The notes: generated from the letters alone by a model not told the origin. DNA of 64,000 nt from Lepidodermella squamata (GCA_047495785.1 JBLDXI010000014.1:248001-312000), one strand, 5' to 3'; shown: positions 10,966 to 61,100, counted from the stretch's first letter. Translations and numbers: made by a program.

Positions 10966-12054
10966 ATGACCTATTTTTTCAACAGAACAAACCTCTTACT
11001 GATCATCAATGTTTTTTCTACGACGCTTCTCTGCATCGGTTCGACTCAACTTCAACTTGGCCAGCCGAAAGAAGTCGCCCGCCATATTTACAAGACCGTT
11101 GTGAGGTTACAGGCTTCCGGGGCTCATGTCGCTGCGCCCGATGTCATTATGCCGTCAGGCGATGTTACTTACCTTTCATTCAACTCGACCGAACTGTGGC
11201 AAGCATCCGAAAATCTCATTTCAATCGAAATTGTTCGAAAAGCTGGACAACGATCGAAGCATCAACCACGGCTGTGGCTGGCCTCTCCCGGTTCTCGAGG
11301 TGGTCGCGGTTTGATGTGGCGAGCTTGCGAGCTGGTGCTTGACAAGAAGCGACGAAACAGTGCCGGTAAACAGCGTTGGGAATTCATACGATCGAAATCA
11401 GCCGAATGCATTAGACATTTCGCTAAATCTCAGTTGGTATTCGCCGCAATTTCTCCAGTTGTACCTTCGATTTCGGCAAGAAAAGCCAAACTCATGATGA
11501 GTTCCAAGTCCAAGCAAGCTAGGATGAAGAAATCGCCCGTCATGCTTGTTTCGTATTACACGTCGGAAGATCAATCGGTCGCAATGGCGCCAACCGGCGA
11601 TTTCAACCCGTTAAAGCCGTCAAATTCACCCGAAGCTACTGTTTCAACCGAGTTCGCAATCAATTTTATGGCGGGCCGTTCGAATGTTCGGAAAACCCGT
11701 TCGATCGCCAACCGGAAAAGTGAAGATCACGTCGCACCCATTCTGTGCAAACGCACGCCTTTGGTGACTCGTGTCGAAGATGTCGGCCTTCAAGACTACA
11801 TCATCTATCCGCGGCAATTCGACATCGGTCAGTGCGCTGGTATTTGCGCGTTTCCCTTGACGCAAGAAGTCGACCCCCGAACGCACAGCGTGTTACAGCT
11901 GATGCACCACCTCGCGCAACCCGATCGCGTTCCAGCACCCGGCTGCGTTCCCGTTTCTTTCCGGCCCATCAGCGTACTTGTTCAAAGGCCTGATAACTCG
12001 TTGGTCGTCGAAGTTTTTAACGATTTGATTGTACAGTCATGTGGCTGCAGATGA
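10966..12054 (+). CDS. TGF-beta superfamily ligand, divergent BMP/Dpp-like, intronless
   Basis: Signal peptide, prodomain, furin site RKTR, mature domain CKR...IIYPRQFDIGQCAGICAFPL...THSVLQ...PAPGCVP...ISVL...CGCR. Confidence 0.9.
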   Translation: MTYFFNRTNLLLIINVFSTTLLCIGSTQLQLGQPKEVARHIYKTVVRLQASGAHVAAPDVIMPSGDVTYLSFNSTELWQASENLISIEIVRKAGQRSKHQPRLWLASPGSRGGRGLMWRACELVLDKKRRNSAGKQRWEFIRSKSAECIRHFAKSQLVFAAISPVVPSISARKAKLMMSSKSKQARMKKSPVMLVSYYTSEDQSVAMAPTGDFNPLKPSNSPEATVSTEFAINFMAGRSNVRKTRSIANRKSEDHVAPILCKRTPLVTRVEDVGLQDYIIYPRQFDIGQCAGICAFPLTQEVDPRTHSVLQLMHHLAQPDRVPAPGCVPVSFRPISVLVQRPDNSLVVEVFNDLIVQSCGCR

Positions 12055-12469: not shown

Positions 12470-13525
12470 ATGTCAAGCTCAGCGAAATCTTGGGGAGATT
12501 TCAAAGATCCAGATTCCATTAAATCCTATGTTAATGGTTTAGCCGGAAAGTTCAACTCGAAAGTTGAACGAGCTGTTCCTTTAACAGGTGGCCTTATCAA
12601 TCATGTCTTCCGGATTTACTTTGAAGACACGAGTACTGCTGTTTTCAAACACTACCCAAGCCGTATTGTTACGGAAATAGAATTGGTCGAAGTTATCCAA
12701 GATCGTTACTACGTCGAGAAATCAGCTCTCGAACAGTTGGCTACAATTCCTAGCCTGCAATCTCTGAAAATTCAAGCTCCTAAAATTTTGCATTCAGATG
12801 ACCCCAATTATGTTCTGATAATGCAGGATTGTGGGGAGAAGACTGTCTTGTTATTCGATTTCCTCAAAAACGACTACAATCCGAACAACGAAATATCGGT
12901 GGAAGAAAACAAGCTCCTAATTACAGATATCATCGATCTATTAGCGTGCGAAATCAACAAATTTCTCAAAATTGTCGCAACAGCTATAACAACACAAGCA
13001 AACGAGGCTGAATTTGTAAACCCATCAAGCTGGACGGCCATGAGGACGTTTCGGCCAACCATGCAGAATAGACAGGCGAAAGCTCTGGACCTAGAAAACG
13101 AACTCGAATACTACCTGCAGAATCAAAAGCCGATGAATCCGCCCGAGAACGCCGTTTTCGTTCACGGGGATTTGTGGCCGAACTCTGTAATGGTTGATGT
13201 TGAAAATAAGACTTTTTGGCTGATAGACTGGGAAGTGGCTCGATTCGATTCACCCACACAAGACCTGGAGCAGTTTTGCGCCAATCTGTGGGTTATGATG
13301 CAAAACGAGACGATGTGGGATTCAAACAGGATTCGCTACCTGCTTGATCGGCTTCAGCGCGAATACTTTGGTTCCTCTTCTAGTGACTGGCGATCAGCCG
13401 ATAGCGACTACGGCAAAGCAAACTTTGTACTTTGGGTATTGATTCTGCTATATTTCAAACACTGGGGTGCCGAAAATCCACGAGAACTCGTTCTAAAGGC
13501 TATTGAGGAAGTCGAAGGGCTGTGA
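12470..13525 (+). CDS. APH/choline kinase-fold small-molecule phosphotransferase (methylthioribose-kinase-like), copy 1
   Basis: Intronless 351 aa. LTGGLINHVFRI, VFK, LIMQDCG, HGDLWPNSVMV, IDWE. Confidence 0.85.
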   Translation: MSSSAKSWGDFKDPDSIKSYVNGLAGKFNSKVERAVPLTGGLINHVFRIYFEDTSTAVFKHYPSRIVTEIELVEVIQDRYYVEKSALEQLATIPSLQSLKIQAPKILHSDDPNYVLIMQDCGEKTVLLFDFLKNDYNPNNEISVEENKLLITDIIDLLACEINKFLKIVATAITTQANEAEFVNPSSWTAMRTFRPTMQNRQAKALDLENELEYYLQNQKPMNPPENAVFVHGDLWPNSVMVDVENKTFWLIDWEVARFDSPTQDLEQFCANLWVMMQNETMWDSNRIRYLLDRLQREYFGSSSSDWRSADSDYGKANFVLWVLILLYFKHWGAENPRELVLKAIEEVEGL

Positions 13526-13748
13526 TCCAATATCCCGCGTGCGGGCGAATGAAATAGAGGGCAAATTTCTTTCATTCACGATACTTGTTAATAAAATTCT
13601 GTCGATTCTTGCACGAAACTAAAATTCTGATTTCTATAATCAACGTCTTACAGTAGAGTCCAAATCGAAGGTTCAAGATATCGGTGTTAATGACCTCGAT
13701 CTAGGGGCTCGATCATTGTTTCTCTGTTTACTTTTTCCGGCTTATTAA

Positions 13749-14757
13749 CCCTCTAATGCCGAAAACGTGTATACTCAAACTGGCGCTATTCACCTTGAAT
13801 TTTCATACTTCCCGATTTTTGCCGGCCTAGCCGCTTGGCAATTTTGTAGTTGGCCATCAGGGCTCCCCGATTCCGAAAACCGCAAAGTCGGCGCGTTGAT
13901 TGCGTAACACAGGTGAGTGCGCGCGTCAGGTGGTCGGATGATTTGTGTGTATACTCAATCAATTTTTTGTATAAACACATGGCGGCCGCCCGGACGGCCG
14001 GTTTTGAGTGAATGATTAGACTCCGTTGTGTGTAAAGTCAATTGCCAATTGAGTTTACTCATACCAGGCGCCGATATCTATATTTACAGTCGTTTTTTAA
14101 ATGTTTTGTGGTAAATAATAATTATTCGGGGTGACCAGCTTTTAGGTCGCGGTCTAGTGTTGCGCCACACACTGTTGCGTAACAACAATCAGCTCGCAAT
14201 TGTTGCTCAATACTGAGCTCTTTCTCACAATGCTTGCTCGGAAATAAAAGGCAGCCAGGCAGAGCGCAAAATAACACATCAATATTACTTAGTTTAAGGT
14301 TCTATCTGAATACGATTAGTCTTTTTGCACAAAATTGCCCATACCTGTCGCGGCTTCGCAGCGATTTTCGTCAGCGCGCCGCAAGCCCGCCAATTGCCGC
14401 ATTTACCTGTGCTGTTGTTTAGCTGCTGGTCGTGCCGGCGAATCATGTCGACCTTTGATTTAGGCTACTTACGGCAATTTCTTCAATTTTTTCAGATTTT
14501 GAGAATTTCATGAATAAAATACATGTGATGTTGCGCTCTTCCTGAGTTAACTCAAGTGCGTATTTATACAATTTTTTTAGCACGAGTAAACTCAATTGGT
14601 ACAAGTGTATACTCAGTTTCATAATTCAAAGTCCAAAAAAGGAGGTCCCGGTTGAGTATACACACGTAGATAGCTGTATATACTCATTTTGAGTCAGTTT
14701 TGACCGATTGAGTAAACTCAGTTTGTATAAAGCCGAGAAGCTGCCGGCATTAGAGGG
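13749..14757. mobile_element. non-autonomous piggyBac-type element (MITE), 1009 bp
   Basis: Perfect 13-bp TIRs CCCTCTAATGCCG (13749-13761) / CGGCATTAGAGGG (14745-14757), TTAA on both sides (13745-13748, 14758-14761). Multiple internal GTATACTCA/GAGTAAACTC motifs in both orientations. No transposase ORF. Confidence 0.9.
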
Positions 14758-14915
14758 TTAACTTTGACCCACGCTGAAAGTGAAGATATGGTATCAAGGA
14801 CGATGCCCTATCATACTGATAAGCCAACAAAGCCTATTTGTCCTACATATAGAATAAACGGAACAATCCGTAGCCTTAGCATATTTTATAATTATCAGCT
14901 TCTCATTGGGCCAAA

Positions 14916-15968
14916 ATGTCCAGCACAGCTAAAACTTGGGAAGATTTCAAAGATCCGGATTCCATTAAATCCTATGTTAATGGATTAGCTGAAGCCGGGA
15001 TATTCCATTCGAAATTCGAACGAGCTGTTCCTTTAACAGGCGGCCTAGTCAACCATGTTTCACGGATCTACTTTGAAGACGCGAGCACTGCTGTTTTCAA
15101 ACACTACCCTCGCCGCATTTTTGTAGAGAATCAAGAGTTTGAAGGTTCTCAAGAACGCTACTTCGTCGAAAAATCAGCTCTCGAAAAGTTGGCTACCATT
15201 CCTAGTTTGCAGTCGTTGAAAATTCGAGCCCCAAAAGTTCTTCATTCAGATGACCCCAATTATGTTCTGATAATGCAGGATTGTGGGGAGAAGACAGTCA
15301 TGCTGTTCGATTTCCTCAAAAATGACTACATTCCGAACAAGGAACGAACGGCTGAAGAAAACAGGCGCATTATAACAGAGATGATCGATCTATTAGCGCA
15401 TGAAATCAACACATTTCTTAAAATAATTGCAAGTGAAATCACAAGCCTGGCTGAATTTGGAAACCCAGCAAGCTTGCGGGCCATGGAGAAGTTTCGGCCA
15501 GGTCTGCAGATCGGACAGGCAAAAGCTCTCAACTTGGAAAAAGAGCTGGAATACTATCTGAAGAACCAACGCGATTTTAAACCACCCGAGAACGCTGTTT
15601 TCATTCATGGCGATTTTTGGTCAAACTCGATCTTGGTAGATGTTGAAAATGAGATGTTTTGGGTGATTGACTGGGAAATATCTCGATTTGATTCTCCAAC
15701 AGAGGATTTGGATCGGTTTGGGACCAATTTGTGGGTTATGATGCAAAACAAGACGACGTGGGATTCAAACAGGATTCGCTACCTGCTTGAACGGCTACAG
15801 CTCGAATACTTCGGGTCCTCTTCTAGTGACTGGCGATTAGCCGATGGCGACTACGGCAAAATTAACTTTGTTCTATGGGCGTTGATTCTGCTATATTTCA
15901 AACACTGGGGTGCCGAAAATCCACGAGAAATCGTTCTGAAGGCTATTAAAGAAGTCGAAGGGTTGTGA
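14916..15968 (+). CDS. APH-fold phosphotransferase, copy 2
   Basis: Intronless 350-aa paralogue. LTGGLVNHVSRI, HGDFWSNSILV, IDWE. Confidence 0.85.
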   Translation: MSSTAKTWEDFKDPDSIKSYVNGLAEAGIFHSKFERAVPLTGGLVNHVSRIYFEDASTAVFKHYPRRIFVENQEFEGSQERYFVEKSALEKLATIPSLQSLKIRAPKVLHSDDPNYVLIMQDCGEKTVMLFDFLKNDYIPNKERTAEENRRIITEMIDLLAHEINTFLKIIASEITSLAEFGNPASLRAMEKFRPGLQIGQAKALNLEKELEYYLKNQRDFKPPENAVFIHGDFWSNSILVDVENEMFWVIDWEISRFDSPTEDLDRFGTNLWVMMQNKTTWDSNRIRYLLERLQLEYFGSSSSDWRLADGDYGKINFVLWALILLYFKHWGAENPREIVLKAIKEVEGL

Positions 15969-16562
15969 TCCCATGAGTGGACGAATGAAATACGGAAAAA
16001 TTCTATCATTCACGAAACATTATATCAAAATTCCACCGATTCCTGCTCGTTGATAGTGCTTGAGATTTCAATATTGAACTTTTTCAAATTTTCAGTAGCG
16101 TAAAAATCGAAATTCCAATGCAAATTATCGGCGCATCGCAAGATAGGAAATCATTTTTTAATATTTAATATCACTGATTCTTTGATCAATAAAATATGCG
16201 GTTACTCAATAAAATCTCAATTAAAAAAAGGTACCAGTAAAATTCTCACAGGTAGTTCAGCAAATTTCGGATTAGATTTGAGAGCTCTCTTAACTAATTC
16301 AAAATTTGCTGGACATGCATAATCCTGCAAGATTTTCGGCCTTGGAAGCACAGTTTTCGACAGTAAGGCTGAACTATGGATTGAACCTATCCTCACATGG
16401 CCACCAGGTGCTTCATTACACAATATGTTGAGTGAGCTCACCCACCCACTTTGATAGCATAATCTCTTATCGCTACGTTAGTCCACTGCTTTTCTCAATG
16501 GCTTCACTCATTCATCACATATTTTATTTTTTATAATAATAGGTTTTTTTCTAAGCGAGAAG

Positions 16563-17630
16563 ATGTTGCCAGTAGCTCAATCCGATACTGAGTTTAAAGA
16601 TTCAGACTCCGTTGTATCATTTGTCAACGGCTTAGTCGACGCCGGGAAGCTTCAGTCGAAAGCTGAACGAGCAGTTTCTTTGACTGGTGGCCTTTGCAAC
16701 TACGTATTTCGGATTTATTTTCAAGATGCGAGTACCGCTGTTTTCAAGTATTTCCCATCACGTATTATTGGACAAGTTGACACCGTCGAAGTTCCTCAAA
16801 ATCGTTACTACGTCGAGAAAGCAGCTCTTGAGAAATTGGGCAGCGTTCCCAGCTTGCAGGCTTTGAAATTTCGAACCCCTAAAGTGCTTTATTCAGACGA
16901 CAGTTTGTACGTTCTGATAATGCAAGATTGCGGTGAGAAGACGGTCATGCTGTTCGATTTCTTGAAAAAAGACTTCGTTCTTAACAGCCAACTATCGGCT
17001 GAGGATAACGAGTTGCAAATCAAGGCGATGATCGATTTATTTGCCAGCGAAGTCAGCAAATTTTTGAAACTCATCGCCAGCGACTCGGGAATCACTACCC
17101 ATACGCACCAGGCCGAATTCGCCAACCCGACGAGTTGGCAGGCCCTGCAATCGTGGAGGCCGGCGATGCAAGACCAGCAGGCGAAAGCGCTCAACTTGGA
17201 AAAAGAGCTCGAATACTACCTGAAGAATCAACGCGATTTGAAACAACCTGAGAATGCTGTATTCGTCCACGGGGATTTGTGGCCAAATTCTGTATTGGTC
17301 GATGTTGAAAATAAGACATTTTGGTTGATAGACTGGGAGGTGGCTCGATTCGATTCACCAACACAGGACCTGGAACAGTTCGGCGGCAACTTGTGGATTA
17401 TGATGCAGAACGAGACGATGTGTGACACAGCTCGAATTCGATACTTGTTTCAACGACTGCAACTGGAATATTTGGGTTCTGTCGCCCGTGATTGGCGGTT
17501 GGCCGGTGGCGACTACGGCAAAATTAACTTTGTGTTATGGGTGTTAATTCTGATTTATTACAAACATTGGGGCATTGATAATCCACGAGAGCTAGTATTG
17601 AAAGCTATCAAAGAAGCTGAAGAGCTTTAA
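16563..17630 (+). CDS. APH-fold phosphotransferase, copy 3
   Basis: Intronless 355-aa paralogue. LTGGLCNYVFRI, HGDLWPNSVLV, IDWE. Confidence 0.85.
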   Translation: MLPVAQSDTEFKDSDSVVSFVNGLVDAGKLQSKAERAVSLTGGLCNYVFRIYFQDASTAVFKYFPSRIIGQVDTVEVPQNRYYVEKAALEKLGSVPSLQALKFRTPKVLYSDDSLYVLIMQDCGEKTVMLFDFLKKDFVLNSQLSAEDNELQIKAMIDLFASEVSKFLKLIASDSGITTHTHQAEFANPTSWQALQSWRPAMQDQQAKALNLEKELEYYLKNQRDLKQPENAVFVHGDLWPNSVLVDVENKTFWLIDWEVARFDSPTQDLEQFGGNLWIMMQNETMCDTARIRYLFQRLQLEYLGSVARDWRLAGGDYGKINFVLWVLILIYYKHWGIDNPRELVLKAIKEAEEL

Positions 17631-17723: not shown

Positions 17724-18408
17724 CTATTGCTTGAGAATTTCACTGATCACCGTTTTCATCCTCGCAGTTATGTCCAAATCGAAAATTTCTACGAACGGAA
17801 TTTCAAGGCGTTTCAAAATCTCGACCATTTTAGCGGTGAGCAGTTTTGCTTCCTCCAACGAGCTGATCATTCTGATACAGTCCTCAGCAATGCATCCCGG
17901 GTGCGGATGAATCACGAATATCAAGCTGGATCGATAGCTGAAAGAACAAAAATGCCATTAGAGTCATTTTTCAACTCGTTCCAATAAACCAACTGGTCAA
18001 TGTCTTGCTCAAATCCAGATCTTAGCATAAGCTGATCGGCACTTTCTCGTCCAAAGAAAAACTCCTCGTACATTATAGGATCGATTCCAGATCGGTCGAA
18101 CAATGCTAATTTGTTCTTGTGATTTTCGATTTCACGATGCTGAGCGGCAAGAATGTCGAATTGCAACTGTTTAAAACACTCTGGATGCAAATGGGGCGGG
18201 CAGAAGTCTTCGCGCCTTAGCTGCGATTTCTCAATCACTCGACGCGCAACTTCGGTAACAACCTGTGGAAATAACCCAGAATTTATCATTTTATTCGATA
18301 AAAAAGACAGTGATGTACAGTCATCGAAGGAAGAAGCTTCGCCACTTCGTTGACCAGTGTCGTTTTACCGGTGCTGTGCGAGCCGCAAATGAAAATATGC
18401 CTCGACAT
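17724..18408 (-). CDS. NadR/Ttd14-like (AAA_28) P-loop nucleoside/nucleotide-kinase-fold protein, copy A
   Basis: Exons 18408-18319, 18262-17994, 17937-17724 give MSRHIFICGSHSTGKTTLVNEV...VVTEVARRV...LQFDILAAQ...LFDRSGIDPIMY...EDCIR. The Walker A exon is missed by the ORF track. Confidence 0.85.
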
Positions 18409-18721
18409 TTTAGATGGAAGTTTTGCTACAGAGAAATAATTTGTATCGCCCAGTTCGAACGACTTGCAATCGTGAGGTGCAACACAAGATCATTAGCTGC
18501 GGTCTTTATTTATTACACCGAGATGTGCCGCCAGCGAAACGTGGCCCTGACTTGCAATAAAATTATCGCACTGCCTCACTCCGCGCACTAATTATTACTA
18601 GATGTAACTTTTGGATAATGACGCTCAGATCAAACCAAATACTCCTTTAATTGACGCTTTATCGCTCTTAATATCCACGATAATCCTTCAGACAGCGGCT
18701 AAAATTATCTTTCATAACATT

Positions 18722-19495
18722 TTATTGTTGGGCTATACCATTTAATAGTTTATCAAATATCACCACGTTTGATTGATCGCTATTTACCTCCGCTGTGGCA
18801 TTTCTTCGCCTTGCAATTTCCGCTAAGACAATTTCAACCCGGCGTCTCAAGTCCAAGCATTTGATTTCGATGAACTGCAAGTCGAAGCGATTTAGAATTT
18901 CGATCAGTTTGCTAGTTAATAGTTCTGCTTCTTGCACAGAGCTGATCATTCTTATTTCATCCTCTCGTATGCACTCCGCTTGCGGATGAACGACGACAAT
19001 TAAGCTGGAGCGATAGCTGCAAAGACAGCCGTTATATGCTTTAAAATCTCGTAGAAACAATAACTTACTGGGTAAGGTCCTGTCTAAATTCCGGTAACGA
19101 AGCCAGTCGCTCGAAACTATCAGGGCCCAGGTAGAATTCGGCGTACATTAGGGGGTCAATACCTCGATCGTAGATAGCTATTGACTTCTCGGAATTTTTC
19201 CCGATCTCGAAATGTTGAGCTCTCAGTATGTCTGCTTGAAGTTGCTCGAAAACTTCACGATGTAAATGGGGCGGGCTGAAGTCTTCACGCTTGAGATTTG
19301 ACCTGTTAATAACGCGCCTGGCTACCTCAGTCACAACCTGTAATTTTGCGAAATTTGACTGAGCTTTTTTCGAATTATTAGTTGAATTCTTACGGCAGCT
19401 GAAGGTAACGCCTTCGCCAGTTCGTTCAACAGCGTGGTTTTTCCGGTGCTATGAGCTCCGCAGATGAAGACATGCAGGGGATGAGAGTCGCACAT
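18722..19495 (-). CDS. NadR/Ttd14-like (AAA_28) P-loop kinase-fold protein, copy B
   Basis: Exons 19495-19394, 19337-19069, 19016-18722 give HVFICGAHSTGKTTLLNEL...VVTEVARRV...LQADILRAQ...IYDRGIDPLMY...EDEIR. Intron positions are the same as in copy A. Confidence 0.85.
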
Positions 19496-19831: not shown

Positions 19832-22800
19832 ATGTTGAAATGTAAGACTAATTGTTTGTGCCGATTTTGCGGCGAAAAGCCAGAGGTTTTGGTCATTCGT
19901 CAAACGAGCGAAACTGCTTCGAAATCGCCAGGAATCATCAACATTGAGGTTTTGAGGTCGTCGCCGCTGATACCACCTTCTGACAGCGAAGACAGTGATT
20001 CGTCGAGTAAGCGACAACCAAGCGTTCACGACTTCACCCTCAAAGCAAAATGGGTCGAGGATCGCCCGTGCTGTCCGTTATACGCGAAATACCCCGATAA
20101 AACCTTCGCGAAGATTCGATGCGAAGCTCAGAATGGAATCTCCGAACTAATCGCTAGCTTTCTCAACAATGGAATTAAGGTGGAGTTGAACTCAAGTCGT
20201 AAGGACTTTAAATTTTTCGGCTGCAGCGCTTCTCAAATGCGACAGCGAACATGCATTCTTTACGACTCTTCCCTTGGCGATTGGAAGAGTATTGCCCTGT
20301 CATTCGGCCATTTCGAAGAAATTAAGACGGTTGCTAAATTTTCTGCAAGACTTGGTCTTCTTTTATCTTCAAGCATGAACCTGGAAAATGAGATTTTCCT
20401 AAAAGAGACTCAAATTGATAGAATCGAAGATATCGAAAGAAATGGCTACACATTCACCGACGGATGTGGCCACGTGTCCCCTGAAATCGCCCTGAAAATC
20501 ATGAAAGCTCTATGCTCGAAAAAATCGTTGCTAAAGCCATGGTGGTATGAAACCCAAAAATTTCCCTACCCATCGGTTTTCCAGATCCGTCTCATGGGTT
20601 GCAAGGGCGTGATTGCGCTGAAACCAAGCCTGCAAAATTGCATCCAGATTCGACCTTCGATGGAGAAGTTCCGGTGGAAACTCGACCCTCCTCATCGGTT
20701 AGGCATCTGTGATAATGGATTCTCGCGTCCGTATGAGTTCGGTAAATTGAACAAGCAGTACATCATGGTTTTATCGGCCCTTGGCATTGCGGATTCGGTC
20801 TTCCTGGAGATTCAGGAAAACTACTACTCCGAGCTTCAGCGGCTCGAAACCGACCGCACCCTCGCTGTCAAGTACCTCTGCCTAGAAGATCGTTGGGATT
20901 TGGTCGAGCGGGTATTTCAGAAGCAAGTGATTGATGCTGAAACCGCTGAAATTCTCAAATCGATTAAAATGCGAGTTGTCGAAAAATCGAATGCTGAAAA
21001 GAGCAAGCTGGAACGGCTCAACATCCCGATTTGGAAATCTCGCAATATTTTCGGGATAAGCGATCAAAGTGGGAAGCTGCAAGAGGGCGAGGTGTTTCTG
21101 CAGGTTACAATCGATCGAAAGCCGCAAATCATCGAAGATGGCCAGTTTGTCGTAGTCACCAGGTCGCCTTGCCATTCACCTGGCGACATTCGAATCCTGA
21201 AATGCCGGTTTATACCCGAACTTCAACATTTGGTCGATTGTGTTGTATTTCCGACAAATGGCCAGAGACCTCACCCAGACGAATGTTCTGGAGGTGACCT
21301 TGATGGTGACAAGTTCTTCGTTTGTTGGGACGACCGGCTCATCCCGGAGCAAAACGCCGAGCCAGTCAATCTCAGCTCGAAGGTCGTCGCGAAAAAAGTC
21401 GACCAAATCGACCAGGGAGATCTTATTCTCGAGTTTGCGAAATACAACGCAAGTTTATTGGGAACTGTGACTAATCTATTCAATCGCTGGGCGGATGCTT
21501 CAGATAACGGGGTCAATTCTGACATTTGCAAGGTCCTACGATTGAAGTGCAGCAGCGCGGTTGACGCGGCTAAAACTGGCGATCCGGTCAAAATCGAACC
21601 AGCTTATCGGCGCGTGCCGCTCGCAAATCGGAATCACGTATGGATTAGAATGACTGAAATCGCTGATTCATACGCGTCCAGGAAGTTGGAGGTTGCTTCG
21701 ACCGAGGACGTTAAAGGCATTGGTCGCGAAGAAATTGAACGAATTTTGGATGACCGATACCCTACTCTGTCCGAGTATCAATTGTATCGCCTGGTCGTGA
21801 AATGGTGCGATGCTCATGACGGCGGATTGCTGGAAAAATTGTGTCGGAAAATTGATTTCTCGCGATTCACTCGGGAAGAGCTGCAAAGCCTCAGAATTGA
21901 CGTTGGTATCGAAAAAGCTAATAAGTTGAGTTCTGCGCTAAATTGGTCAACCCTACTCGAACCTGTTGATATCAGTGAAGCAATTGGAACTAGAAACCAA
22001 TCCGCTTGGTCTCTTTATTACGCAGATAGTTTGAATGAAACGACATGGGATGTTTTGGAGAGTTTTCTCAGTATTGATCTACCGAAAATGATTCTACTTC
22101 GCCCTGATTTCGACTTCGATGGAGTTGTGGGGCTGAAGATTCTGGACCCAGTCCTAACTGGACAAAGCTCCATTTCGAGGGATAGATTGACAGTTTTTTA
22201 CTTGGATCACAGCTTTTCCAACCGCCATGTCTTTCATCTTAACGAGGATTATGCAATAGATTTCGACCCGGAAAATCGGCGGCTACAGATCTATCAAGGG
22301 CAGTTGGCAAATTCATTCGTTTTTTTCAAAGATACAAAAGGAGTCGGCAATGTTTTGAGCGTGGCTGTCAACAAATTTGCAGGCATTGATCGAAGCTTGG
22401 TTGGTAGGGTGAATAAACGACCAGTCCTGAGGATTGAGCTGTACTGCGAAAAGCCGAGGAACCAATTATCAGGTCCGATTTGACATCGCCCACTGCAGTC
22501 TACTTTGACAACAGCTTCGTCAATCAAGGTCGAAGTAGTTAAGACGGAAAACGGCTTCTCCTTCTCCGATGAAGATTTCCCTCAACTTGGCGCAGAAGTT
22601 CCTCGAAAAGACGCTGCTGTTGGCGGAACTTTGTCAAGTGACTTGTACCGAAGACTAAACAAGCCTTTGCACAGTAAAGAAGAAGCTGCCAATTTGGCTA
22701 AGGAAATTTACACTTTTATCGAAGAAAAAAGCCAGAAATCTAAGGTTGATCTTTTCTCACGTTTCTAAGCTTTTGATTCAGTTATTGCCCTTCACCAGGA

Positions 22801-25452
22801 ACCCATCCATTTAGCGATTCAGCTTGTGAACTTCCTCGCCAGCTACGAACTTGTTCTGGAAAATTCTCAGCAATACGCAACATTGTGCTCGGCAATTTTT
22901 TCGGCCATTGACTTGTATGCTGATTCCAAAAATTGTTTCTCCATCGCCACTATCCGTGAAAATGGGTAAGGAATTGATTCTCGCATTGACATTTATTGAA
23001 TACGGCTGCGTAGCAGCGACAGTTCGAAAAATCGCCTGGTGTCTTTTTTCGAGGCGAAATTTGAAAGGTTAGCTTATACTTTCTTGAGAAAATCGCGTAA
23101 AAATGGTAATTTTCTAGAATCAATGAGTCGATGAAGCGCATCGGCCTCGTCTTCTCCGCGAAAGATTGTTATCAAATTTTCAGGCGATTGCTTGAAAATC
23201 CACCAGAACACCAAACCTCGGTCGACATCATTAGCAGCTTGTTATTTCAAGGGAAAGAAAGTAAGAAATTGTGCAAAATTTAAACTCAGATAAAATCTCC
23301 AAATCACACTTTTAGAAACTTTCTTCCCGTTGGCGGCAGGCCGCTGGTCAAGCAGTGCATCCTATTTCTTGCATTGGGCTTGTTTGCTCACAATCGAAGC
23401 TTTGCAAGATCATTTCGACCAGTATCGAGAAATCATACTTCGCTCTAAAATTCAACTTGCCGTGGCTGAGATGGACGGTGATTTTAGCATGAATTAAATT
23501 GTATTCCAGTCATAATTCATAACTTATCCCCAGATAAAAGCGAAGCTCCCAAGGCTTGTAAGCTTCAGCTGATTCATCCCATAGTAGCAGCTTATTCGGC
23601 TGGCGAGGCCTTGATTATCAGCCCATCGGCAAGCGATTCAGAACCGTTTCAAGCCACTGTCATGGTTGAAATAGTTAGTGCTGACAAATCATCGGATCGG
23701 TACACGGTTCGGTCTTCTGGAGATGAAATTCTTCCAATGAAGCAACTTGCAACGTACCGAGTCGATGTTGTTCCAAACATCACTCCATTCGATCGGCAGC
23801 TGAAAGCTTTGATGCACCTGTGTTACCAAGACCATTCTGCTGAAGTTGAATTGGCTGTTCCACCTGTCGCCAACTGCCTAATCAATTCATTTCGCAACGA
23901 ATCGGTTGAAAATGACCATGAACCTTCGATTACTCCGTTAGAAGCAACGGAAGACTTAGATGGAATGAATCCCAGCCAGAAGAAAGCGATTAGAGATGCT
24001 GTTCAACGCCCGGTTACTCTAGTCCATGGTCCTCCTGGAACCGGCAAAACACGGGTTGCCGCTTCCATCGTGAAAAATTGGGTCAAAGCTGGTTTTACCC
24101 CGGTTTTGTGCGTGGCCGAGACAAACTTTGCCGTCAACAACCTTGCAGAAAAGCTGATTGACAGCGGTTTCCCCGAAGACGGCCTGTTACGTGTCAGTGC
24201 TGATGGTCAAATCCCAGCATCGCTCGAAAAGATTGCCCTCGAGACTGTATACAGGGCGAAATTCAAAGAATCAAACAAGTACCGCATTGCTGAGCATATG
24301 CTCGACTCTGCCAAGGTTCAGAAGCTAATTCGGGGCAGTAAGGTTGTTTTTGTAACTTGTAAAGGAGCTGGTAGTAACAAGCTTTCGTTGACCGAGAACG
24401 GCCGCGGTCTTTTCAAGGCGATTCTTGTCGATGAGGCTGCTCAAGCTCTCGAGCCAACTGTTCTCATCCCCTTGGCACAAAGCCACTGCGAACGGCTGTG
24501 CCTTGTCGGAGACGACCGTCAGCTTCCGCCTTTGGTGAAAGTTGATAAAATCAAAGCGGAGCTATCTAAATCGCTTTTCGAACGGTTGAAAACCGGGCGA
24601 TCTACCCTTCTGGACACTCAATACCGTATGCACCCTGACATTGCCCGATTTCCGAACGAAAATTTCTACGACGGGAAGCTTCGAAATGGCGTTAATTCGG
24701 TCGATCGACCTCTACCGCGAGGGTTCAATTGGCCTAGCCAGAAATCGCCAATTTGCTTCATCAACGTGGATGCAACTGAGCCTGAAAGATGTAGCCAAGG
24801 TTCTAAGATCAATGCGAAGGAGGCAGATGCGGTTGTTGAAGTTGTTAGACAGCTACTTCAAAGCTCCGAACTTCAGCCTGAGAACATTGGAATCATCACA
24901 CCTTACAGTGGACAGGTAGGAATAAAAGTTTTATTAACAATTCTTCTCTAAAATTCTGCGCAGGAGCGACATCTGAAGACCCTTCTGAAGGACAAGAAAT
25001 TGGCCATCGATGTACGCACCGTTGATGGTTTCCAGGGTCAAGAGCGCGACGTCATTTTAGTTTCACTTGTGCGAAATCGCCAAAGCATTGGTGAGGCATC
25101 ATTTATTACTAATACTTAGCATTCCTAATTTTATCGATTAATCCACAGGTTTTCTTGACGATGATCGGCGGATGAATGTGCTACTTACACGAGCTAAACG
25201 TGGTCTGATCGTTTTTGGCTGTAAGAAAACCCTTCAAGATAACAGCGATTCAAAATGGGCTAGATGGATCAACGATATCTGGAAATCTGGCTTATATCTA
25301 GGTACTGATTTCACTCTGCATATCAAATAAATCGATCGATTTAGTTTGGCATTAATTTTTCAGATATGCAACCTGTGCAACGTCCAGCAACCGGTCATGG
25401 ACGTCCCTCGGCGCCTAACAACAGTGGTACTCGCAAGTATTATCGTCGATAA
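19832..25452 (+). CDS. cellular RNA-dependent RNA polymerase fused to a Upf1/DNA2-NAM7-like SF1 helicase (~1715 aa)
   Basis: Exons 19832-22472, 22515-22744, 22799-22965, 23014-23067, 23118-23260, 23316-23477, 23534-24915, 24964-25090, 25149-25301, 25364-25452 (5148 nt; all GT-AG, phases consistent). RdRP motifs: FFGCSASQMR, FTDGCG, FQIRLMGCKG, TRSPCHSPGD, GGDLDGDKFFVCWD, SAVDAAKTG. Helicase motifs: HGPPGTGKT, TNFAVN, DEAAQ, VGDDRQLPP, QYRMHP, ITPYSGQ, TVDGFQGQE, RMNVLLTRAK. AATAAA at ~25517. Confidence 0.88.
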
Positions 25453-25601
25453 ACTTGAGACGTTTCGAAGTTGATTTTCCAACAATTTTTGCATGACCTG
25501 ACGTGATCAAAAAAGAATAAAATGTTTCTTGAAATTTATTCCGGTTACACTAAGGAAGAGCTATCAATTCGAAAATTTCTAACACAAAATGCTATAATCG
25601 A

Positions 25602-28600
25602 TCAATAAACAGCGGATGAACGGAGAGTGAACTGTCTCGCCCGCGTATGAATAGCCGGCAATCCGATCGTTTTGATTCGGGCTGTTTCAATCGCATCGGC
25701 CATGCGAGTTAAATTCATACCGCGCAGCGTTTCAACCAACTGCATAACTGTGACGTTTTTGTTAAGGCGGCGCCATTTCCGCAGAACCTGGTACGCAAGT
25801 TTGCGCAGCTCGGCAGTTGCGTCCGTCGACGTCGCGCCAGTGCCGGCACTTGGCACTACGTACGTTGTCCGAGGCACTGGCGCTCGGTCTTTATCGTCGA
25901 CCCAAACGTGCGGGTAGTTGGGGTAGGGCGGCGTAGTCACCTCGCGGCAACCGAGTTGCAACAAATCGCGCTTGCGTTTCGCAGCCGACCTTGACGGCTC
26001 GAACGGCAGGCGCCGGTACAACTCAGGTAAACTCTGACCGATCTCCTGAGCCACGAGAGCCAGAGCTGACGTCATCAACTGGTCAGTATCTGCTGGTTCG
26101 TAAGATGTCACCGAGATGTTGTTGGTATTCAGCGCAATTCCCTTTTCGAGGGCTTGCTGCTGCTGATAGAAAATTCGCTTCAAAATGTCTGGATTGCGCT
26201 TTAGATCGATAATTCTGACAACAGCCCGAATTTTCGCCTCGGTTAGCTTCAACTCGTTTTCAGCCTCCGAAGCAAGTCTATCACGATTGAAAGAAAATAT
26301 TTCAAAGCTATGTGAGATTGGAGTGAAATATTACTTTGTGTAACGTTTGGCGTCGGTCAGTTCTCGGCGACCGATTTCCAAGTTAGCTTCCTTGGCCTGA
26401 GAGATGCTGACAACTTCAGATTCGAGCAGCTGCATTTTCAACTTTATGGACCTAATTTTCTTCCTGGTAGCTGAAAGTTGCCGCTGAAGTGTCGCAGCGT
26501 TATTAATCATCTAAAATCAAGACAATTCAATTTTAGGTGAAATAATAGTGGAAAAATTTGCTAACATGACTTTCTACGCCATTGCCATCCCTCTCGGCGT
26601 CTTGAATGTCTCGAGTAGTCGCTTGGAATTTAGCGCCCAAATTAGACTCTTGGTCTTCGAGCGCTTCAAGAATGCGTTGCAGCCGCTTGCCCTGACCCGC
26701 CCGGCTCATGCCGTCGTCGTCGATCAGCGACGCTTTGAACTCGCGCCGCATCGCCATTCGCGTCAGCTCGTCCTTTTTGCGCCGATCCACCTTAAATTCA
26801 TCGCCCATATCCTTTTGCCTCTGCATCAATTGATTGAGCGTTTCCCGCAGCCTTGCTTCATACCGCTCGTCTTCAATCAGCCAGTCCTTCAGTCGTTTGA
26901 CAATAAATTCCATTTGCTCAACGCCCTCCTCGCACATGAGCTTTGCAGTGAGAATGTCGTTTTCGCAAATCAGTAAAATCGCGCAGTTTTTCTCCTTGTT
27001 TTCGATAGTATCCCGCGCCTTGCTAAACCGATGCAGAGCGGCTTCGATGGAGCGCTGGAAAGTATTTATCATGTTGTTGTATGACCAAACGCAGTCGACT
27101 TGAACGTTTTCTATTTCGTGAATAAAGCTGGTACAGTAGCGGGAAACAGCGCCTGAGATCGCCTGAAGATTAGGCCGCATCAACTCGTAAATCTGTATGA
27201 ATTCGTCGATTCGCTCGCTAAAATCGAAAAGCATATACCTCATCACAGAGATTTGAGGCGAAACTTACATTATTCGAAGCGACTTGGTGAGCAAGCTACG
27301 AGTGTCGAACTGCCGATATGGGTACTGCTTCGATTCGAGGAGTGTCTGTAGGTGGCTTCGTAGTTGGGCTAACGATTGAATTTTTCGAAGCTCTGTCACT
27401 TCGGCACTAAATTTCTTCGACGGCGGACCTCCATGCATGATAGATGGTTGCTGGCTGAGCACGGTGCGTGATGGCTTTGTCGACTGCTGGGAAGGCAAGC
27501 TCTCCTGAAGATGCGATCTATAACAAATTCCGCGAACCAATTTAAAATTCAGTTTGCGAAAAATCAGCTGGGTGTGATCAAGTGTTATGATTATAAATCG
27601 GCGTGATAGTGTCATGCGAGTTCTTACTTTTGCGAGTACATTGCAGTCACATATTTATCAATATCGGTAGCTGAAAATTGTAAGCAAATGAAGCGCTGGT
27701 TATACTTTCAAACACAATATAAAGCCAACGGATAACCTTTAATTTTAATTACTGTTTTCTGCCATCTAACTCTGTTATTCGATCTGGGCAATTCACTATA
27801 AATTCGTTATTTTTTAGATTGCAAAATAGCGTTATTTTAGATGCGAATGAAAGCTATGAAAGCGACTCTCAGTGAAGGATTTACTTGGAAAATGAAGTTC
27901 TCTGGTGGTGCAATTGCGCCGCCTGAAGGCCTGCATTCGACATCTGCGCTCCCAGTTTTTTACCCTTTTCATTGGTCGATTTTGAATTCACGGCATCGCT
28001 AATCACGTGATCAATCTCGGTCGAGTAGTAATCAATATCAGTGGCTATACGAGTAGTCATACCAACCTCTACAACCGATAAATTTTATAATATTTCCAAA
28101 CTTACGTATGCCTCCCTCTCGCCCGTTATTCTTCATCCACAGCTGTCTGAAGGTCGAGATTTGGGACTCGCAAGTTTGAAGCTGGGCCATTGCTCGGCGA
28201 CGTACTGTTTTAAGGTTACTCGGCGGCACCCCGCCTGGCCCAATCTCGATCATGCTCATGACTGGGTCGATTTTCGGCAACGGAGTTGCACCTCCTATCT
28301 CACTTGCGCCTTCGACAAGGGTGACAGCAGGGCCACCAATAAGCGCGCCTCCGGGGGTCATAAACGGCGGCACGGCTGACATGGCTCGATTCGATTGGGT
28401 TTCGAAAATAGACTGCCGTTTTATGCTTTGGCGCCGAACCGCCTCAGGAATCACTGGCTCTGGCGTTTTGACGGCTTTTTTACTCGGTTTGATTGCTAAG
28501 AATCGAACCTGGTTTTTGATATGGAAATAGCGCTGGCGCTGGTCTGCGTTAAGAGATCCCACTAAAAAGGAAGAAATTCGAAAAACATTGAGCTGATTTT

Positions 28601-60700: not shown

Positions 60701-61100
60701 AGAGCCAGAATCCAAGACGATTCCTAACGAGTTCGCGCATCCTGTCCTGCCCGTACCCGGCCAGTTGACGATTGTTGAGGAGGCGGATGACGATGACGGG
60801 TACTTTTCGCGGCGCAAAGAGGTCACGTCATCCGGGGCTGGGCCTTTCTTCTCGAAACTCTACTTTTCAACAGCAACAGCTCCCGTTGAAGACACATCGA
60901 TCTCGGCTGATTGGTATGTCGCCGCAACGACGGTTAACAGCCAGGCGGCTTTTGAGCTACCAGCTAATCTCCAGGAAAACGGTAAGAAAAATATTGCGGG
61001 AATTTTTTTTCTAAAGTTGGCCCTTTTTCCAGGCAACGGAAGCGAGGTAAATCGCAGTCGGAGCGGCTCTGCTTGTTCTAATCAACAGCGGTTCAATTGA
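57790..61100 (+). CDS. large low-complexity Pro/Ser-rich disordered protein
   Basis: ORFs 57760-58074, 57938-59173 and 59100-61100 are linked by short GT-AG introns (~58061, ~59057, ~60982). Polyproline tracts, a PPxY motif, one short coiled coil; no recognised domain. Confidence 0.7.

What the first reader, a model, noticed from the sequence alone, without database searches (positions are those of the whole stretch)
19832..25452. Single-chain RdRP + Upf1-like SF1 helicase hidden across ten exons
Seen: the ORF track shows separate RdRP (883 aa) and helicase (446 aa) ORFs, but five small linker exons with canonical splice sites join them in frame into ~1715 aa. The catalytic DLDGD and all SF1 motifs are intact. 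Established: in S. pombe, Rdp1 works with the separate Upf1-like helicase Hrr1 in RDRC; C. elegans ZNFX-1 associates with the RdRP EGO-1; cellular RdRPs are patchily distributed in animals. Inference: an RDRC-in-one-polypeptide for siRNA amplification or antiviral dsRNA synthesis, possibly of a fungal-like RdRP-helicase lineage.
Basis: partly seen in the sequence, partly recalled or inferred. Interest (0 to 1): 0.8.

Follow-up and report, generated by a model that had tools for sequence, protein, structure and literature searches.

The report
One gene: RdRP plus Upf1-like helicase
A single ten-exon animal gene really does encode a 1,715-residue protein that joins a cellular RNA-dependent RNA polymerase to a Upf1-like RNA helicase, but it belongs to an old family that is already in the databases, though unstudied, in corals, amphioxus, crinoids, rotifers and fungi.

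Summary
Removing nine GT-AG introns of 42-62 nt from 19832-25452 (+) leaves a 5,148-nt ORF of 1,715 aa. It reads RdRP (DLDGD intact), a ~400-aa linker, then a Upf1-like SF1 helicase with all motifs intact.

The spliced protein aligns end to end in one HSP with annotated ~1,750-aa RdRP+AAA_11+AAA_12 proteins of amphioxus, octocoral, stony corals and Brachionus. Six of the nine introns, three of them in the linker, share position and phase with amphioxus and/or octocoral orthologues. One relative carries the fusion as a single uninterrupted ORF.

So this is not a new architecture. It is a divergent (33-34% identity) member of an ancient animal-plus-fungal fusion family. The amphioxus member (BL02069, RdRP+AAA_12) appears in a figure legend of Pinzon et al. 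2019, who found no secondary siRNAs in amphioxus.

The "RDRC in one polypeptide" reading is a reasonable analogy. The siRNA-amplification function is untested and has some evidence against it.

New here: two small NadR-kinase-like (AAA_28) genes sit head to head with the fusion gene. The same pairing occurs in cnidarian-type (coral) loci and amphioxus, and AAA_28 is fused to the sister RdRP in bdelloid rotifers.

The window is not human and the RdRP is cellular, not viral.

The parts
19832..22472 (+). Exon 1 (aa 1-880): N-terminal region plus the whole RdRP. The Pfam RdRP match covers nt 20123-21604; the catalytic DLDGD is at 21296-21310.
   Evidence: PDB sequence search: plant RDR2-type 7w84 E=9e-56, QDE-1 4e-16.
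22515..22744 (+). Exon 2 (linker, aa 881-957). It is preceded by a 42-nt GT-AG intron that holds the in-frame TGA at 22481.
   Evidence: The intron after this exon (aa 957.0, phase 0) is shared with Dendronephthya (975.0, phase 0) and B. floridae (984.0, phase 0).
22799..22965 (+). Exon 3 (linker, aa 958-1012).
   Evidence: It lies inside the single HSP with the full-length orthologues.
23014..23067 (+). Exon 4 (linker, aa 1013-1030). Its acceptor could also be 23016/17 or 23022/23.
   Evidence: The downstream intron (aa 1030.7, phase 2) is shared with B. floridae (1042.67, phase 2).
23118..23260 (+). Exon 5 (linker, aa 1031-1078).
   Evidence: The downstream intron (1078.3, phase 1) matches B. 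floridae 1084.33 and Dendronephthya 1077.33, both phase 1, within 2 aa of alignment slack.
23316..23477 (+). Exon 6 (linker, aa 1079-1132), the end of the helical-bundle part of the linker.
   Evidence: (tblastn with the Stylophora linker).
23534..24915 (+). Exon 7 (aa 1133-1593): beta-barrel (1B-like), then RecA1 and the start of RecA2. Walker A is at 24028-24051, DEAAQ at 24430-24444, GDDRQLPP at 24508-24531.
   Evidence: The AF2 model of this exon best matches the human UPF1 core 2gk6_A (E=6e-28, TMq 0.68).
24964..25090 (+). Exon 8 (aa 1594-1635): RecA2, with FQGQERD at 25030-25050.
   Evidence: The flanking introns (1593.0 phase 0; 1635.3 phase 1) are shared with B. floridae.
25149..25301 (+). 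Exon 9 (aa 1636-1686): motif VI, TRAKRG at 25187-25204.
   Evidence: (AAA_12 C-terminal end).
25364..25452 (+). Exon 10 (aa 1687-1715) and the TAA stop. An AATAAA lies at 25516, 64 nt downstream.
   Evidence: The upstream intron (1686.3, phase 1) is shared with B. floridae and Dendronephthya.
18722..19495 (-). AAA_28 (NadR ribosylnicotinamide-kinase-like P-loop) gene, copy A. It has 3 exons and encodes 221 aa. It is head to head with the fusion gene; the two ATGs are 336 nt apart.
   Evidence: The same pairing is seen in L001, L002, L013 and B. floridae L003.
17724..18408 (-). AAA_28 gene, copy B. It is a tandem paralogue with 3 exons, encodes 190 aa, and is 50% identical to copy A.

Best explanation
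This is one real protein-coding gene of an unidentified compact-genome animal. It has ten exons and tiny introns. The product is a 1,715-aa enzyme with four parts. The first is a cellular (double-psi-barrel, PF05183) RNA-dependent RNA polymerase, about aa 1-880. The second is a helical bundle of roughly 190 aa. The third is a small beta-barrel with a stalk. The fourth is a Upf1-like SF1B RNA helicase, aa ~1270-1690.

It is a vertically inherited member of an ancient RdRP-helicase fusion family shared by animals (cnidarians, amphioxus, crinoids, rotifers) and fungi.

Shown: the single reading frame, intact catalytic motifs in both enzymes, conservation of the linker, six shared intron positions, and a conserved head-to-head partner gene encoding a NadR-kinase-like P-loop protein.

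Inferred: the polymerase copies single-stranded RNA into complementary RNA. The tethered ATP-driven 5'-to-3' helicase either clears and feeds the template or peels the product off. The enzyme would thus work as a self-contained version of the RdRP-plus-Upf1-like-helicase pairs known from RNA-silencing complexes such as fission-yeast RDRC.

Whether its product feeds Dicer/Argonaute (I put this at about even odds) or serves another RNA-surveillance or immune role is open.
For: Gene model and motifs. End-to-end single-HSP alignment with six full-length orthologues. Full-length RdRP+AAA_11+AAA_12 proteins of 1,730-1,850 aa occur in three Branchiostoma species, Dendronephthya, Brachionus, Funneliformis and Gyalolechia; shorter or partial models with both domains occur in Stylophora, the crinoids and the dinoflagellate Effrenium. 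The spacing from RdRP end to Walker A is 420-480 aa in both animal and fungal members. Six of nine introns share position and phase with amphioxus and/or octocoral. Relative P0128 is one uninterrupted 1,729-aa ORF on contig L011. Coral-type P0121 is one ORF on a 5.9-kb transcript-like contig (L012), whereas the related genome L001 has the same coding sequence in at least five blocks. RdRP tree: fusion clade 100, animal sub-clade 100. Helicase tree: animal fused helicases form one clade (93). Helicase is closest to UPF1 by sequence (E=7e-50) and by fold (E=6e-28, TMq 0.68). Linker model shows a helical bundle plus barrel. AAA_28 partner. AAA_28-RdRP fusion in Rotaria. RDRC composition: PMC3380556.
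Against: There is no transcript evidence from this organism. An AATAAA at 22412 and the in-frame TGA at 22481 mean an RdRP-only isoform by retention of intron 1 cannot be excluded. Function: in amphioxus, which expresses the orthologue BL02069, no secondary siRNAs and no clear RdRP products were detected (PMC6396948). Polarity: Upf1-like helicases move 5'-to-3' while a polymerase reads its template 3'-to-5', so simple 'helicase ahead of polymerase' coupling on one strand does not work. The same puzzle exists for coronavirus nsp13/nsp12. The linker is weakly conserved (12-23% identity to orthologues). The helical bundle has no convincing structural match. The helicase tree supports a single origin of all fused helicases only weakly (support 32).
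Confidence: 0.78

Rival explanations
1. Two adjacent, separately expressed genes (an RdRP and a helicase). The 'linker exons' would be chance open frames, or the fusion would be only a minor read-through isoform.
For: The stop at 22481-22483 closes the 883-aa ORF and an AATAAA lies at 22412. Public annotation of the crinoid Antedon splits the AAA_12 part into a separate gene. No RNA data exist for this organism.
Against: The linker translates without stops only after removing GT-AG introns. It then aligns colinearly with orthologues inside one HSP. Three linker introns share position and phase with amphioxus or octocoral. Linker length is conserved across animals and fungi. A relative has the whole fusion as a single ORF. 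The helicase exon has no plausible own start: its ORF opens with TTG in the middle of the conserved barrel region.
Confidence: 0.04
2. One reading: a dedicated siRNA amplifier (RDRC in one chain) that makes dsRNA for Dicer or 5'-triphosphate secondary siRNAs.
For: RNAi amplification is the only known function of PF05183 RdRPs (PMC6396948). RdRP with a Upf1-like helicase is the core of RDRC (PMC3380556). Both active sites are intact.
Against: Amphioxus, which expresses the orthologue, shows no secondary siRNAs in libraries designed to capture any 5' phosphorylation state. No Cid12-like, Dicer or Argonaute gene was seen among the window ORFs I scanned. The conserved partner is instead a nucleoside/nucleotide-kinase-like P-loop protein.
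Confidence: 0.4
3. A non-RNAi role: an RNA-surveillance or innate-immune enzyme. It would act with the co-regulated NadR-kinase-like protein, for example by making long antisense or double-stranded RNA as a signal, or by modifying RNA ends.
For: The negative small-RNA result in amphioxus, with the genes nonetheless conserved and expressed. Head-to-head AAA_28 pairing conserved in the window, cnidarian-type (coral) loci and amphioxus, and AAA_28 fused to the sister RdRP in rotifers. The helicase is closest to UPF1, an RNA-surveillance enzyme.
Against: No direct evidence exists for any such activity. The AAA_28 pairing is absent in Nematostella, Dendronephthya, Brachionus, Antedon, Funneliformis and L011.
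Confidence: 0.3
4. A decaying pseudogene, or a recent horizontal acquisition from a fungus.
For: Long terminal branch (1.07) and only 33-42% identity to the nearest relatives.
Against: A 5,148-nt open frame with every catalytic motif intact. Host-like short introns and shared ancient intron positions. Microsynteny with AAA_28 conserved with cnidarian-type (coral) loci and amphioxus. Placement in the animal sub-clade.
Confidence: 0.02

Closest known systems
Uncharacterised animal RdRP-AAA_11-AAA_12 proteins: B. floridae LOC118414200, B. lanceolatum BL02069, Dendronephthya LOC114538372, Stylophora LOC111333194, and a Brachionus calyciflorus unnamed product
   Same: The same order of parts (RdRP, ~430-aa linker, Upf1-like helicase) and about the same length (1,730-1,790 aa). 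Alignment is end to end. Six intron positions and phases are shared. In amphioxus and corals the same head-to-head AAA_28 neighbour is present.
   Different: Only 33-34% identity overall (about 40% in the RdRP, 41-48% in the helicase). The window's branch is long. All introns are 42-62 nt, and exon 1 is intron-free where amphioxus has four introns. There are two AAA_28 copies instead of one.
Fungal RdRP-helicase fusions (for example Funneliformis, Gyalolechia, Xylaria, Mycena, Armillaria)
   Same: The same architecture and linker length. Their RdRPs form one clade (support 100) with the animal fusions.
   Different: They form a separate sub-clade at 27-31% identity. The Dikarya helicase domains do not clearly group with the animal ones. 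No AAA_28 neighbour was found in Funneliformis.
Fission-yeast RDRC (Rdp1 + Hrr1 + Cid12)
   Same: A cellular RdRP working together with an RNA helicase (which I recall to be Upf1-like) to make complementary RNA from transcripts (PMC3380556).
   Different: RDRC is three separate proteins and includes a nucleotidyltransferase, with no counterpart seen here. Orthology of this helicase to Hrr1 was not tested. The link to Argonaute and Dicer is unknown here.
UPF1 / Nam7 (nonsense-mediated decay helicase)
   Same: It is the best sequence and fold match for the helicase core including the 1B-like barrel, and all SF1 motifs are present.
   Different: No CH zinc-knuckle domain or other UPF1-specific Pfam domain was found in the window pieces or in the orthologues. 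An RdRP and a helical bundle sit upstream instead. Identity is about 30%.
Plant RDR2/RDR6 and Neurospora QDE-1
   Same: The same catalytic family (PF05183) with the DxDGD motif. RDR2-type structures match at E=1e-55 to 6e-49.
   Different: Those enzymes lack a fused helicase. QDE-1 matches only around the active site (E=4e-16). The plant and Mucoromycota enzymes formed the outgroup to the fusion clade.
Other helicase-RdRP fusions: an SF2 DEAD-type helicase placed N-terminal to the RdRP (P0138, 2,309 aa; Rhizophlyctis 'rrf1' P0136). The Dictyostelium and oomycete type is from my own memory.
   Same: A helicase and a cellular RdRP in one chain.
   Different: The helicase superfamily differs (SF2), the domain order is opposite, and the RdRP lineage differs.
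Bdelloid-rotifer AAA_28-RdRP proteins (Rotaria, P0038/P0039)
   Same: Their RdRPs are sister to the animal fusion clade. They carry, fused, the same P-loop domain that is a divergent neighbour gene here.
   Different: AAA_28 is N-terminal and covalently joined, and no recognisable SF1 helicase was found (Pfam scan).
Coronavirus nsp12-nsp13 (functional analogy only)
   Same: An RNA polymerase coupled to a Upf1-like SF1B helicase of opposite polarity. nsp13 is among the fold matches.
   Different: The polymerase fold is unrelated (viral palm RdRp), the proteins are separate, and the context is viral. Nothing in the window is viral.

Membership tests
Cellular (eukaryotic) RdRP, Pfam PF05183 | Match to the family profile above the curated cut-off | tested here: met
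   388.6 bits against a cut-off of 23.8, covering profile positions 49-545 of 582.
Cellular (eukaryotic) RdRP, Pfam PF05183 | Catalytic DxDGD motif | tested here: met
   DLDGD at aa 489-493, in the most conserved block of the alignment (69% identity to orthologues).
Cellular (eukaryotic) RdRP, Pfam PF05183 | RNA-templated RNA synthesis | not testable with these tools
   Needs recombinant protein.
Cellular (eukaryotic) RdRP, Pfam PF05183 | Assignment to the alpha, beta or gamma subfamily | not tested
   No labelled QDE-1, Rdp1 or EGO-1 reference sequences were obtainable as tool outputs. RDR2 matches far better than QDE-1.
Upf1-like SF1B helicases | AAA_11 + AAA_12 domains with motifs I, II, III, V and VI | tested here: met
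Upf1-like SF1B helicases | Fold of the core with a beta-barrel (1B) ahead of RecA1 | tested here: met
   An AF2 model of exon 7 (pLDDT 73.9) matches the UPF1 core 2gk6_A at E=6e-28, TMq 0.68, over about 475 columns. The barrel is also present in the orthologue's linker model.
UPF1 proper (NMD factor orthologue) | N-terminal CH zinc-knuckle domain that binds UPF2 | tested here: not met
   No such Pfam hit in the window pieces or in three full-length orthologues. The upstream region is an RdRP plus a helical bundle.
Animal/fungal RdRP-helicase fusion family (BL02069 / LOC118414200 type) | Colinear RdRP, ~430-aa linker and helicase in one chain | tested here: met
   Single HSP q53-1707; linker length.
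Animal/fungal RdRP-helicase fusion family (BL02069 / LOC118414200 type) | RdRP domain inside the fusion clade | tested here: met
   Clade support 100 for the fusion clade and 100 for the animal sub-clade. This was a quick IQ-TREE search and the window has a long branch.
Animal/fungal RdRP-helicase fusion family (BL02069 / LOC118414200 type) | Shared gene structure | tested here: met
   Six of nine introns have the same position and phase as in amphioxus and/or octocoral.
RDRC-type siRNA-amplifying complex | RdRP physically joined to a Upf1-like helicase | tested here: met
   Joined covalently.
RDRC-type siRNA-amplifying complex | Helicase orthologous to Hrr1 / SAD-3 | not tested
   No Hrr1 sequence was available from the tools.
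RDRC-type siRNA-amplifying complex | Cid12-like nucleotidyltransferase partner | tested here: inconclusive
   None was seen among the window ORFs scanned, but partners need not be linked.
RDRC-type siRNA-amplifying complex | Dependent small RNAs loaded on an Argonaute | not testable with these tools
   The published test in amphioxus was negative.

The most novel reading that the evidence does not exclude
The fusion is the core of an ancient three-part module: a NadR-kinase-like P-loop protein, an RdRP and a Upf1-like helicase. It would have been kept as a divergently transcribed gene pair since the cnidarian-bilaterian ancestor and partly fused in bdelloid rotifers. Its job would be something other than classical siRNA amplification, which would explain why animals such as amphioxus keep intact RdRPs without secondary siRNAs.
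Probability: 0.25. Interest if true: 0.75.

Novelty: new member of a known kind. Interest (0 to 1): 0.45.

Why it matters
What cellular RdRPs do in animals outside nematodes is an open question. Pinzon et al. 2019 found them in 98 animal species but could find no RdRP products in amphioxus.

This window adds a divergent but fully intact member of the one animal RdRP lineage that carries its own Upf1-like helicase. Its tiny introns and compact locus should make the gene easy to clone and knock down.

The conserved bidirectional pairing with a small kinase-like P-loop gene is a concrete lead to a co-factor. As far as my searches went, it is undescribed. It turns 'what does this RdRP do?' into a testable three-protein problem.

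The architecture itself is not a discovery.

Tried and rejected
1. A 26-nt intron 22473-22498 (first AG after the donor). Rejected: it shifts into a frame that closes at 22539. The 42-nt intron to 22514 keeps the frame.

2. Exact look-up of ten window ORFs in the 15-billion-protein collection, to identify the organism. None is on record. Rfam and tRNA scans of the window found nothing. The organism stays unidentified. It is an animal by gene content (TGF-beta, rhodopsin-type GPCR, Patched-type SSD, Death domain, EcKL).

3. AAA_28 adjacency as a universal feature. Rejected: it is absent within 10 kb in Brachionus, Dendronephthya, Antedon, Funneliformis and L011. In Nematostella and Dendronephthya the AAA_28 genes lie elsewhere.

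4. Structural identity of the helical bundle in the linker. Foldseek gave only weak hits (E about 3e-4 or weaker, TM at most 0.25), driven by the barrel and stalk. NADPH-oxidase and flavohaemoglobin hits look spurious.

5. Literature search for a description of the fusion. I found only the figure-legend mention of BL02069 + AAA_12. Other 'AAA_12' hits were DOI strings.

6. The large representative-protein search was not run.

7. No spliced protein was handed to any database tool. Pieces were searched apart by reference, and the joined model was used only in local scripts.

Full report
**Scope and housekeeping.** The window is a gene-dense animal sequence. It carries TGF-beta, a rhodopsin-type GPCR, a Patched-type sterol-sensing protein, a Death-domain ORF, EcKL-type kinases and a cellular RdRP. 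Introns are about 50 nt. I do not take it for human, so that restriction did not apply. The polymerase belongs to the cellular double-psi-barrel family PF05183 and is not a viral RdRp. Nothing here is a virus, provirus, toxin or effector. The spliced protein existed only inside local scripts.

**1. The observation.**
- The two large ORFs are as described: 19832-22483 (883 aa) and 23611-24951 (446 aa).
- Pfam calls the first RdRP (E=7e-116) and the second AAA_11 + AAA_12, the Upf1-like SF1 helicase pair. A small ORF at 25172-25330 carries the last 18 positions of AAA_12.
- Between the two large ORFs, one frame is nearly open and is interrupted by single stops.
- Reading the sequence, I placed nine GT-AG introns of 42, 54, 48, 50, 55, 56, 48, 58 and 62 nt.
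- The ten exons give 5,148 nt, or 1,715 aa, ending at the TAA at 25450-25452. An AATAAA lies 64 nt further on.
- Introns are AT-rich (GC 0.336) compared with the CDS (0.467).
The only ambiguity is three alternative in-frame acceptors for intron 3.
- Motifs: DLDGD (489-493), GPPGTGKT (1298-1305), DEAAQ (1432-1436), GDDRQLPP (1458-1465), FQGQERD (1616-1622), TRAKRG (1649-1654).

**2. Is the join real?** Five independent lines say yes.
- (a) The spliced protein aligns in one BLASTP HSP, residues 53-1707, with B. floridae LOC118414200 (1,788 aa, 855 bits). It aligns equally end to end with Dendronephthya LOC114538372, Brachionus and three unnamed full-length proteins. The linker exons are therefore homologous coding sequence.
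- (b) The distance from the end of the RdRP to Walker A is 420-480 aa in 29 animal and fungal members.
- (c) I mapped exact exon structures for the amphioxus and octocoral genes. Window introns at aa 957.0, 1030.7, 1078.3, 1593.0, 1635.3 and 1686.3 coincide in alignment position and phase with introns in one or both. Three of these lie in the linker.
- (d) On metagenome contig L011 the relative P0128 is one uninterrupted 1,729-aa ORF, so no splicing inference is needed.
- (e) A 5.9-kb contig from a sequencing-run assembly (L012) carries the coral-type protein P0121 as one ORF with UTR-like flanks. The related genomic locus L001 has the same coding sequence in at least five separated blocks. 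L012 is therefore most simply a spliced mRNA.

What I cannot exclude is an additional RdRP-only isoform by retention of intron 1. The TGA at 22481 and an AATAAA at 22412 would allow it.

**3. What it is.**
- The word search with the RdRP ORF found nothing closer than 38-40% identity. It did turn up Stylophora LOC111333194 and many fungal proteins with RdRP plus AAA_11.
- Because that search cannot see proteins longer than 1.75 times the query, I repeated it with the full length of the Stylophora protein. Full-length RdRP+AAA_11+AAA_12 proteins of 1,730-1,850 aa appeared in three Branchiostoma species, Dendronephthya, Brachionus calyciflorus, Funneliformis and Gyalolechia. Shorter models with both domains appeared in the crinoids Antedon and Anneissia and the dinoflagellate Effrenium (Pfam checked).
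- Neighbour tables of cnidarian-type (coral) loci L001, L002 and L013 show the RdRP ORF followed on the same strand by AAA_11 and AAA_12 pieces.
- In an RdRP tree rooted on plant, Mucoromycota, Arcella and a second amphioxus RdRP, all fusion-type RdRPs form one clade (SH-aLRT 100). It splits into fungi plus Effrenium (87) and animals (87).
- The animal side consists of bdelloid-rotifer AAA_28-RdRP proteins and a 28-row fusion clade (100) that holds the window. There the window groups with amphioxus, Brachionus and crinoids (94) rather than cnidarians (83).
- This was a quick search and the window has a long branch. I therefore trust the clade memberships, not the fine order.
- The helicase tree keeps the animal fused helicases together (93). 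It is compatible with one origin of all fused helicases, but with support of only 32.
- Together with the shared introns, this points to vertical descent of a gene that was already fused in the cnidarian-bilaterian ancestor, and probably in the opisthokont ancestor. It does not point to a fungal transfer.

**4. The parts.**
- The RdRP matches solved RDR2-type enzymes at E=1e-55 to 6e-49. It matches QDE-1 only around the active site (4e-16).
- The helicase exon matches UPF1 best (7e-50). Yeast Nam7, SETX/Sen1, DNA2, IGHMBP2 and ZNFX1 follow.
- An AlphaFold model of the window's own exon 7 (pLDDT 73.9) superposes on the human UPF1 core (E=6e-28, TMq 0.68). ZNFX1, IGHMBP2, Sen1, Aquarius and coronavirus nsp13 rank further down.
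- A model of the linker of orthologue P0128 (pLDDT 74.9) shows a disordered stretch, then a confident all-helical bundle of about 190 aa. A six-strand barrel and stalk helices follow, ahead of the Q-motif helix.
- The barrel and stalk weakly match the corresponding parts of SETX, ZNFX1, IGHMBP2 and UPF1. The bundle matches nothing convincingly.
- There is no UPF1 CH domain. The helicase is therefore Upf1-like, not a UPF1 orthologue.

**5. A conserved partner gene.**
- Upstream on the minus strand lie two intact three-exon genes: 19495-18722 (221 aa) and 18408-17724 (190 aa). They are 50% identical to each other and encode AAA_28 P-loop proteins.
- The first is head to head with the fusion gene, with 336 nt between the two start codons.
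- The same head-to-head pair occurs at L001, L002, L013 (cnidarian-type loci) and in B. floridae.
- In at least five assemblies the AAA_28 and RdRP hits lie on contigs of identical length.
- In bdelloid rotifers the same domain is fused to the N-terminus of the sister RdRP.
- The family resembles the ribosylnicotinamide-kinase domain of NadR (TIGR01526 positions 164-323, E=2e-11; PDB 6gye, E=0.02).
- The pairing is not universal. It is absent in Brachionus, Dendronephthya, Antedon, Funneliformis and L011, and the Nematostella and Dendronephthya AAA_28 genes sit elsewhere.
- Retention in three distant lineages, plus a fusion in a fourth, is hard to ascribe to chance and suggests a functional link. 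What the kinase-like protein does is unknown.

**6. How it most likely works.**
- Shown: both active sites are intact, they sit in one chain, and the arrangement has been conserved for hundreds of millions of years.
- Inferred from the families: the polymerase makes RNA complementary to a single-stranded RNA template, and the helicase hydrolyses ATP to move 5'-to-3' on RNA.
- A polymerase reads its template 3'-to-5', so the helicase cannot simply run ahead on the same strand.
- The more plausible roles are three: loading onto and stripping the template from its 5' side, tracking the nascent strand and peeling it off, or driving pausing and template switching. The last has been argued for the analogous coronavirus nsp13/nsp12 pair (papers listed).
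- The recurrent pairing of cellular RdRPs with Upf1-like helicases in silencing complexes makes an RDRC-like role the natural prior. RDRC is documented in PMC3380556. The SAD-1/SAD-3, RDR6/SDE3 and EGO-1/ZNFX-1 pairs are from my own knowledge.
- Against that prior, Pinzon et al. 2019 noted the amphioxus member BL02069 (RdRP + AAA_12) as intact and expressed. They found no secondary siRNAs, and hardly any evidence of RdRP products, in libraries that capture any 5' end.
- I therefore hold the biochemical mechanism with moderate confidence. I put the small-RNA output at about even odds.

**7. Novelty and verdict.**
- The architecture is not new. It is annotated, as 'uncharacterized protein', in many animal and fungal genomes, and it appears in one published figure legend.
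- The window adds a divergent member from an unidentified compact-genome animal.
- The family itself is functionally unstudied. The conserved AAA_28 pairing was not described in the literature I could search.
- I rate it a new member of a known kind, with moderate interest.

Noticed in passing
window 17724-19495 (-): Two tandem, intact AAA_28 (NadR ribosylnicotinamide-kinase-like) genes sit head to head with the RdRP-helicase gene. The same divergent pair occurs in cnidarian-type (coral) loci L001, L002 and L013 and in B. floridae L003. It is absent in several other lineages.
   Followed up: yes
P0038/P0039/P0040 (Rotaria and relatives): These bdelloid-rotifer proteins have AAA_28 (aa 3-176) fused N-terminal to an RdRP (241-752), followed by a ~750-aa tail without a recognisable helicase. 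Their RdRPs are sister to the animal RdRP-helicase clade.
   Followed up: partly
window 12470-17630 (+): Three tandem intronless paralogues (351, 350 and 355 aa; 65-75% identical) of the APH/EcKL (ecdysteroid-kinase-like) phosphotransferase family. An intronless TGF-beta-domain ORF precedes them at 10966-12054.
   Followed up: partly
window 57938-61100 (+): A GC-rich stretch (0.556 at 58-60 kb against about 0.44 elsewhere) with overlapping long ORFs of 411 and 666 aa. They are rich in Ser/Pro/Ala/Arg and have no Pfam match, so this is probably one disordered, low-complexity protein.
   Followed up: no
window 25602-26252 (-): A Death-domain ORF lies tail to tail with the fusion gene. It ends about 150 nt after the fusion gene's stop, so the two 3' ends nearly touch.
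   Followed up: no
L011:6471-11660: A metagenome contig from an unidentified eukaryote carries the whole RdRP-helicase fusion (1,729 aa) as a single intron-free ORF. Its neighbours are kinase, Tctex-1 and beta-galactosidase genes.
   Followed up: partly
L008 (Antedon mediterranea) and P0125 (Anneissia japonica): There are likely annotation artefacts in crinoids. In Antedon the AAA_12 end of the fusion is annotated as a separate 283-aa gene. Anneissia P0125 (1,730 aa) contains two RdRP domains in tandem, perhaps two merged gene copies.
   Followed up: no
L007:6100-11650 (Dendronephthya): The octocoral AAA_28 genes form a local cluster of several copies and fragments on a contig different from that of its RdRP-helicase gene.
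   Followed up: no
P0028, P0030 (JGI): These RdRP-only ORF fragments of about 800 aa are named 'regulator of nonsense transcripts 1' by their source. Probably the name was inherited from the Upf1-like helicase part of a longer gene model.
   Followed up: no
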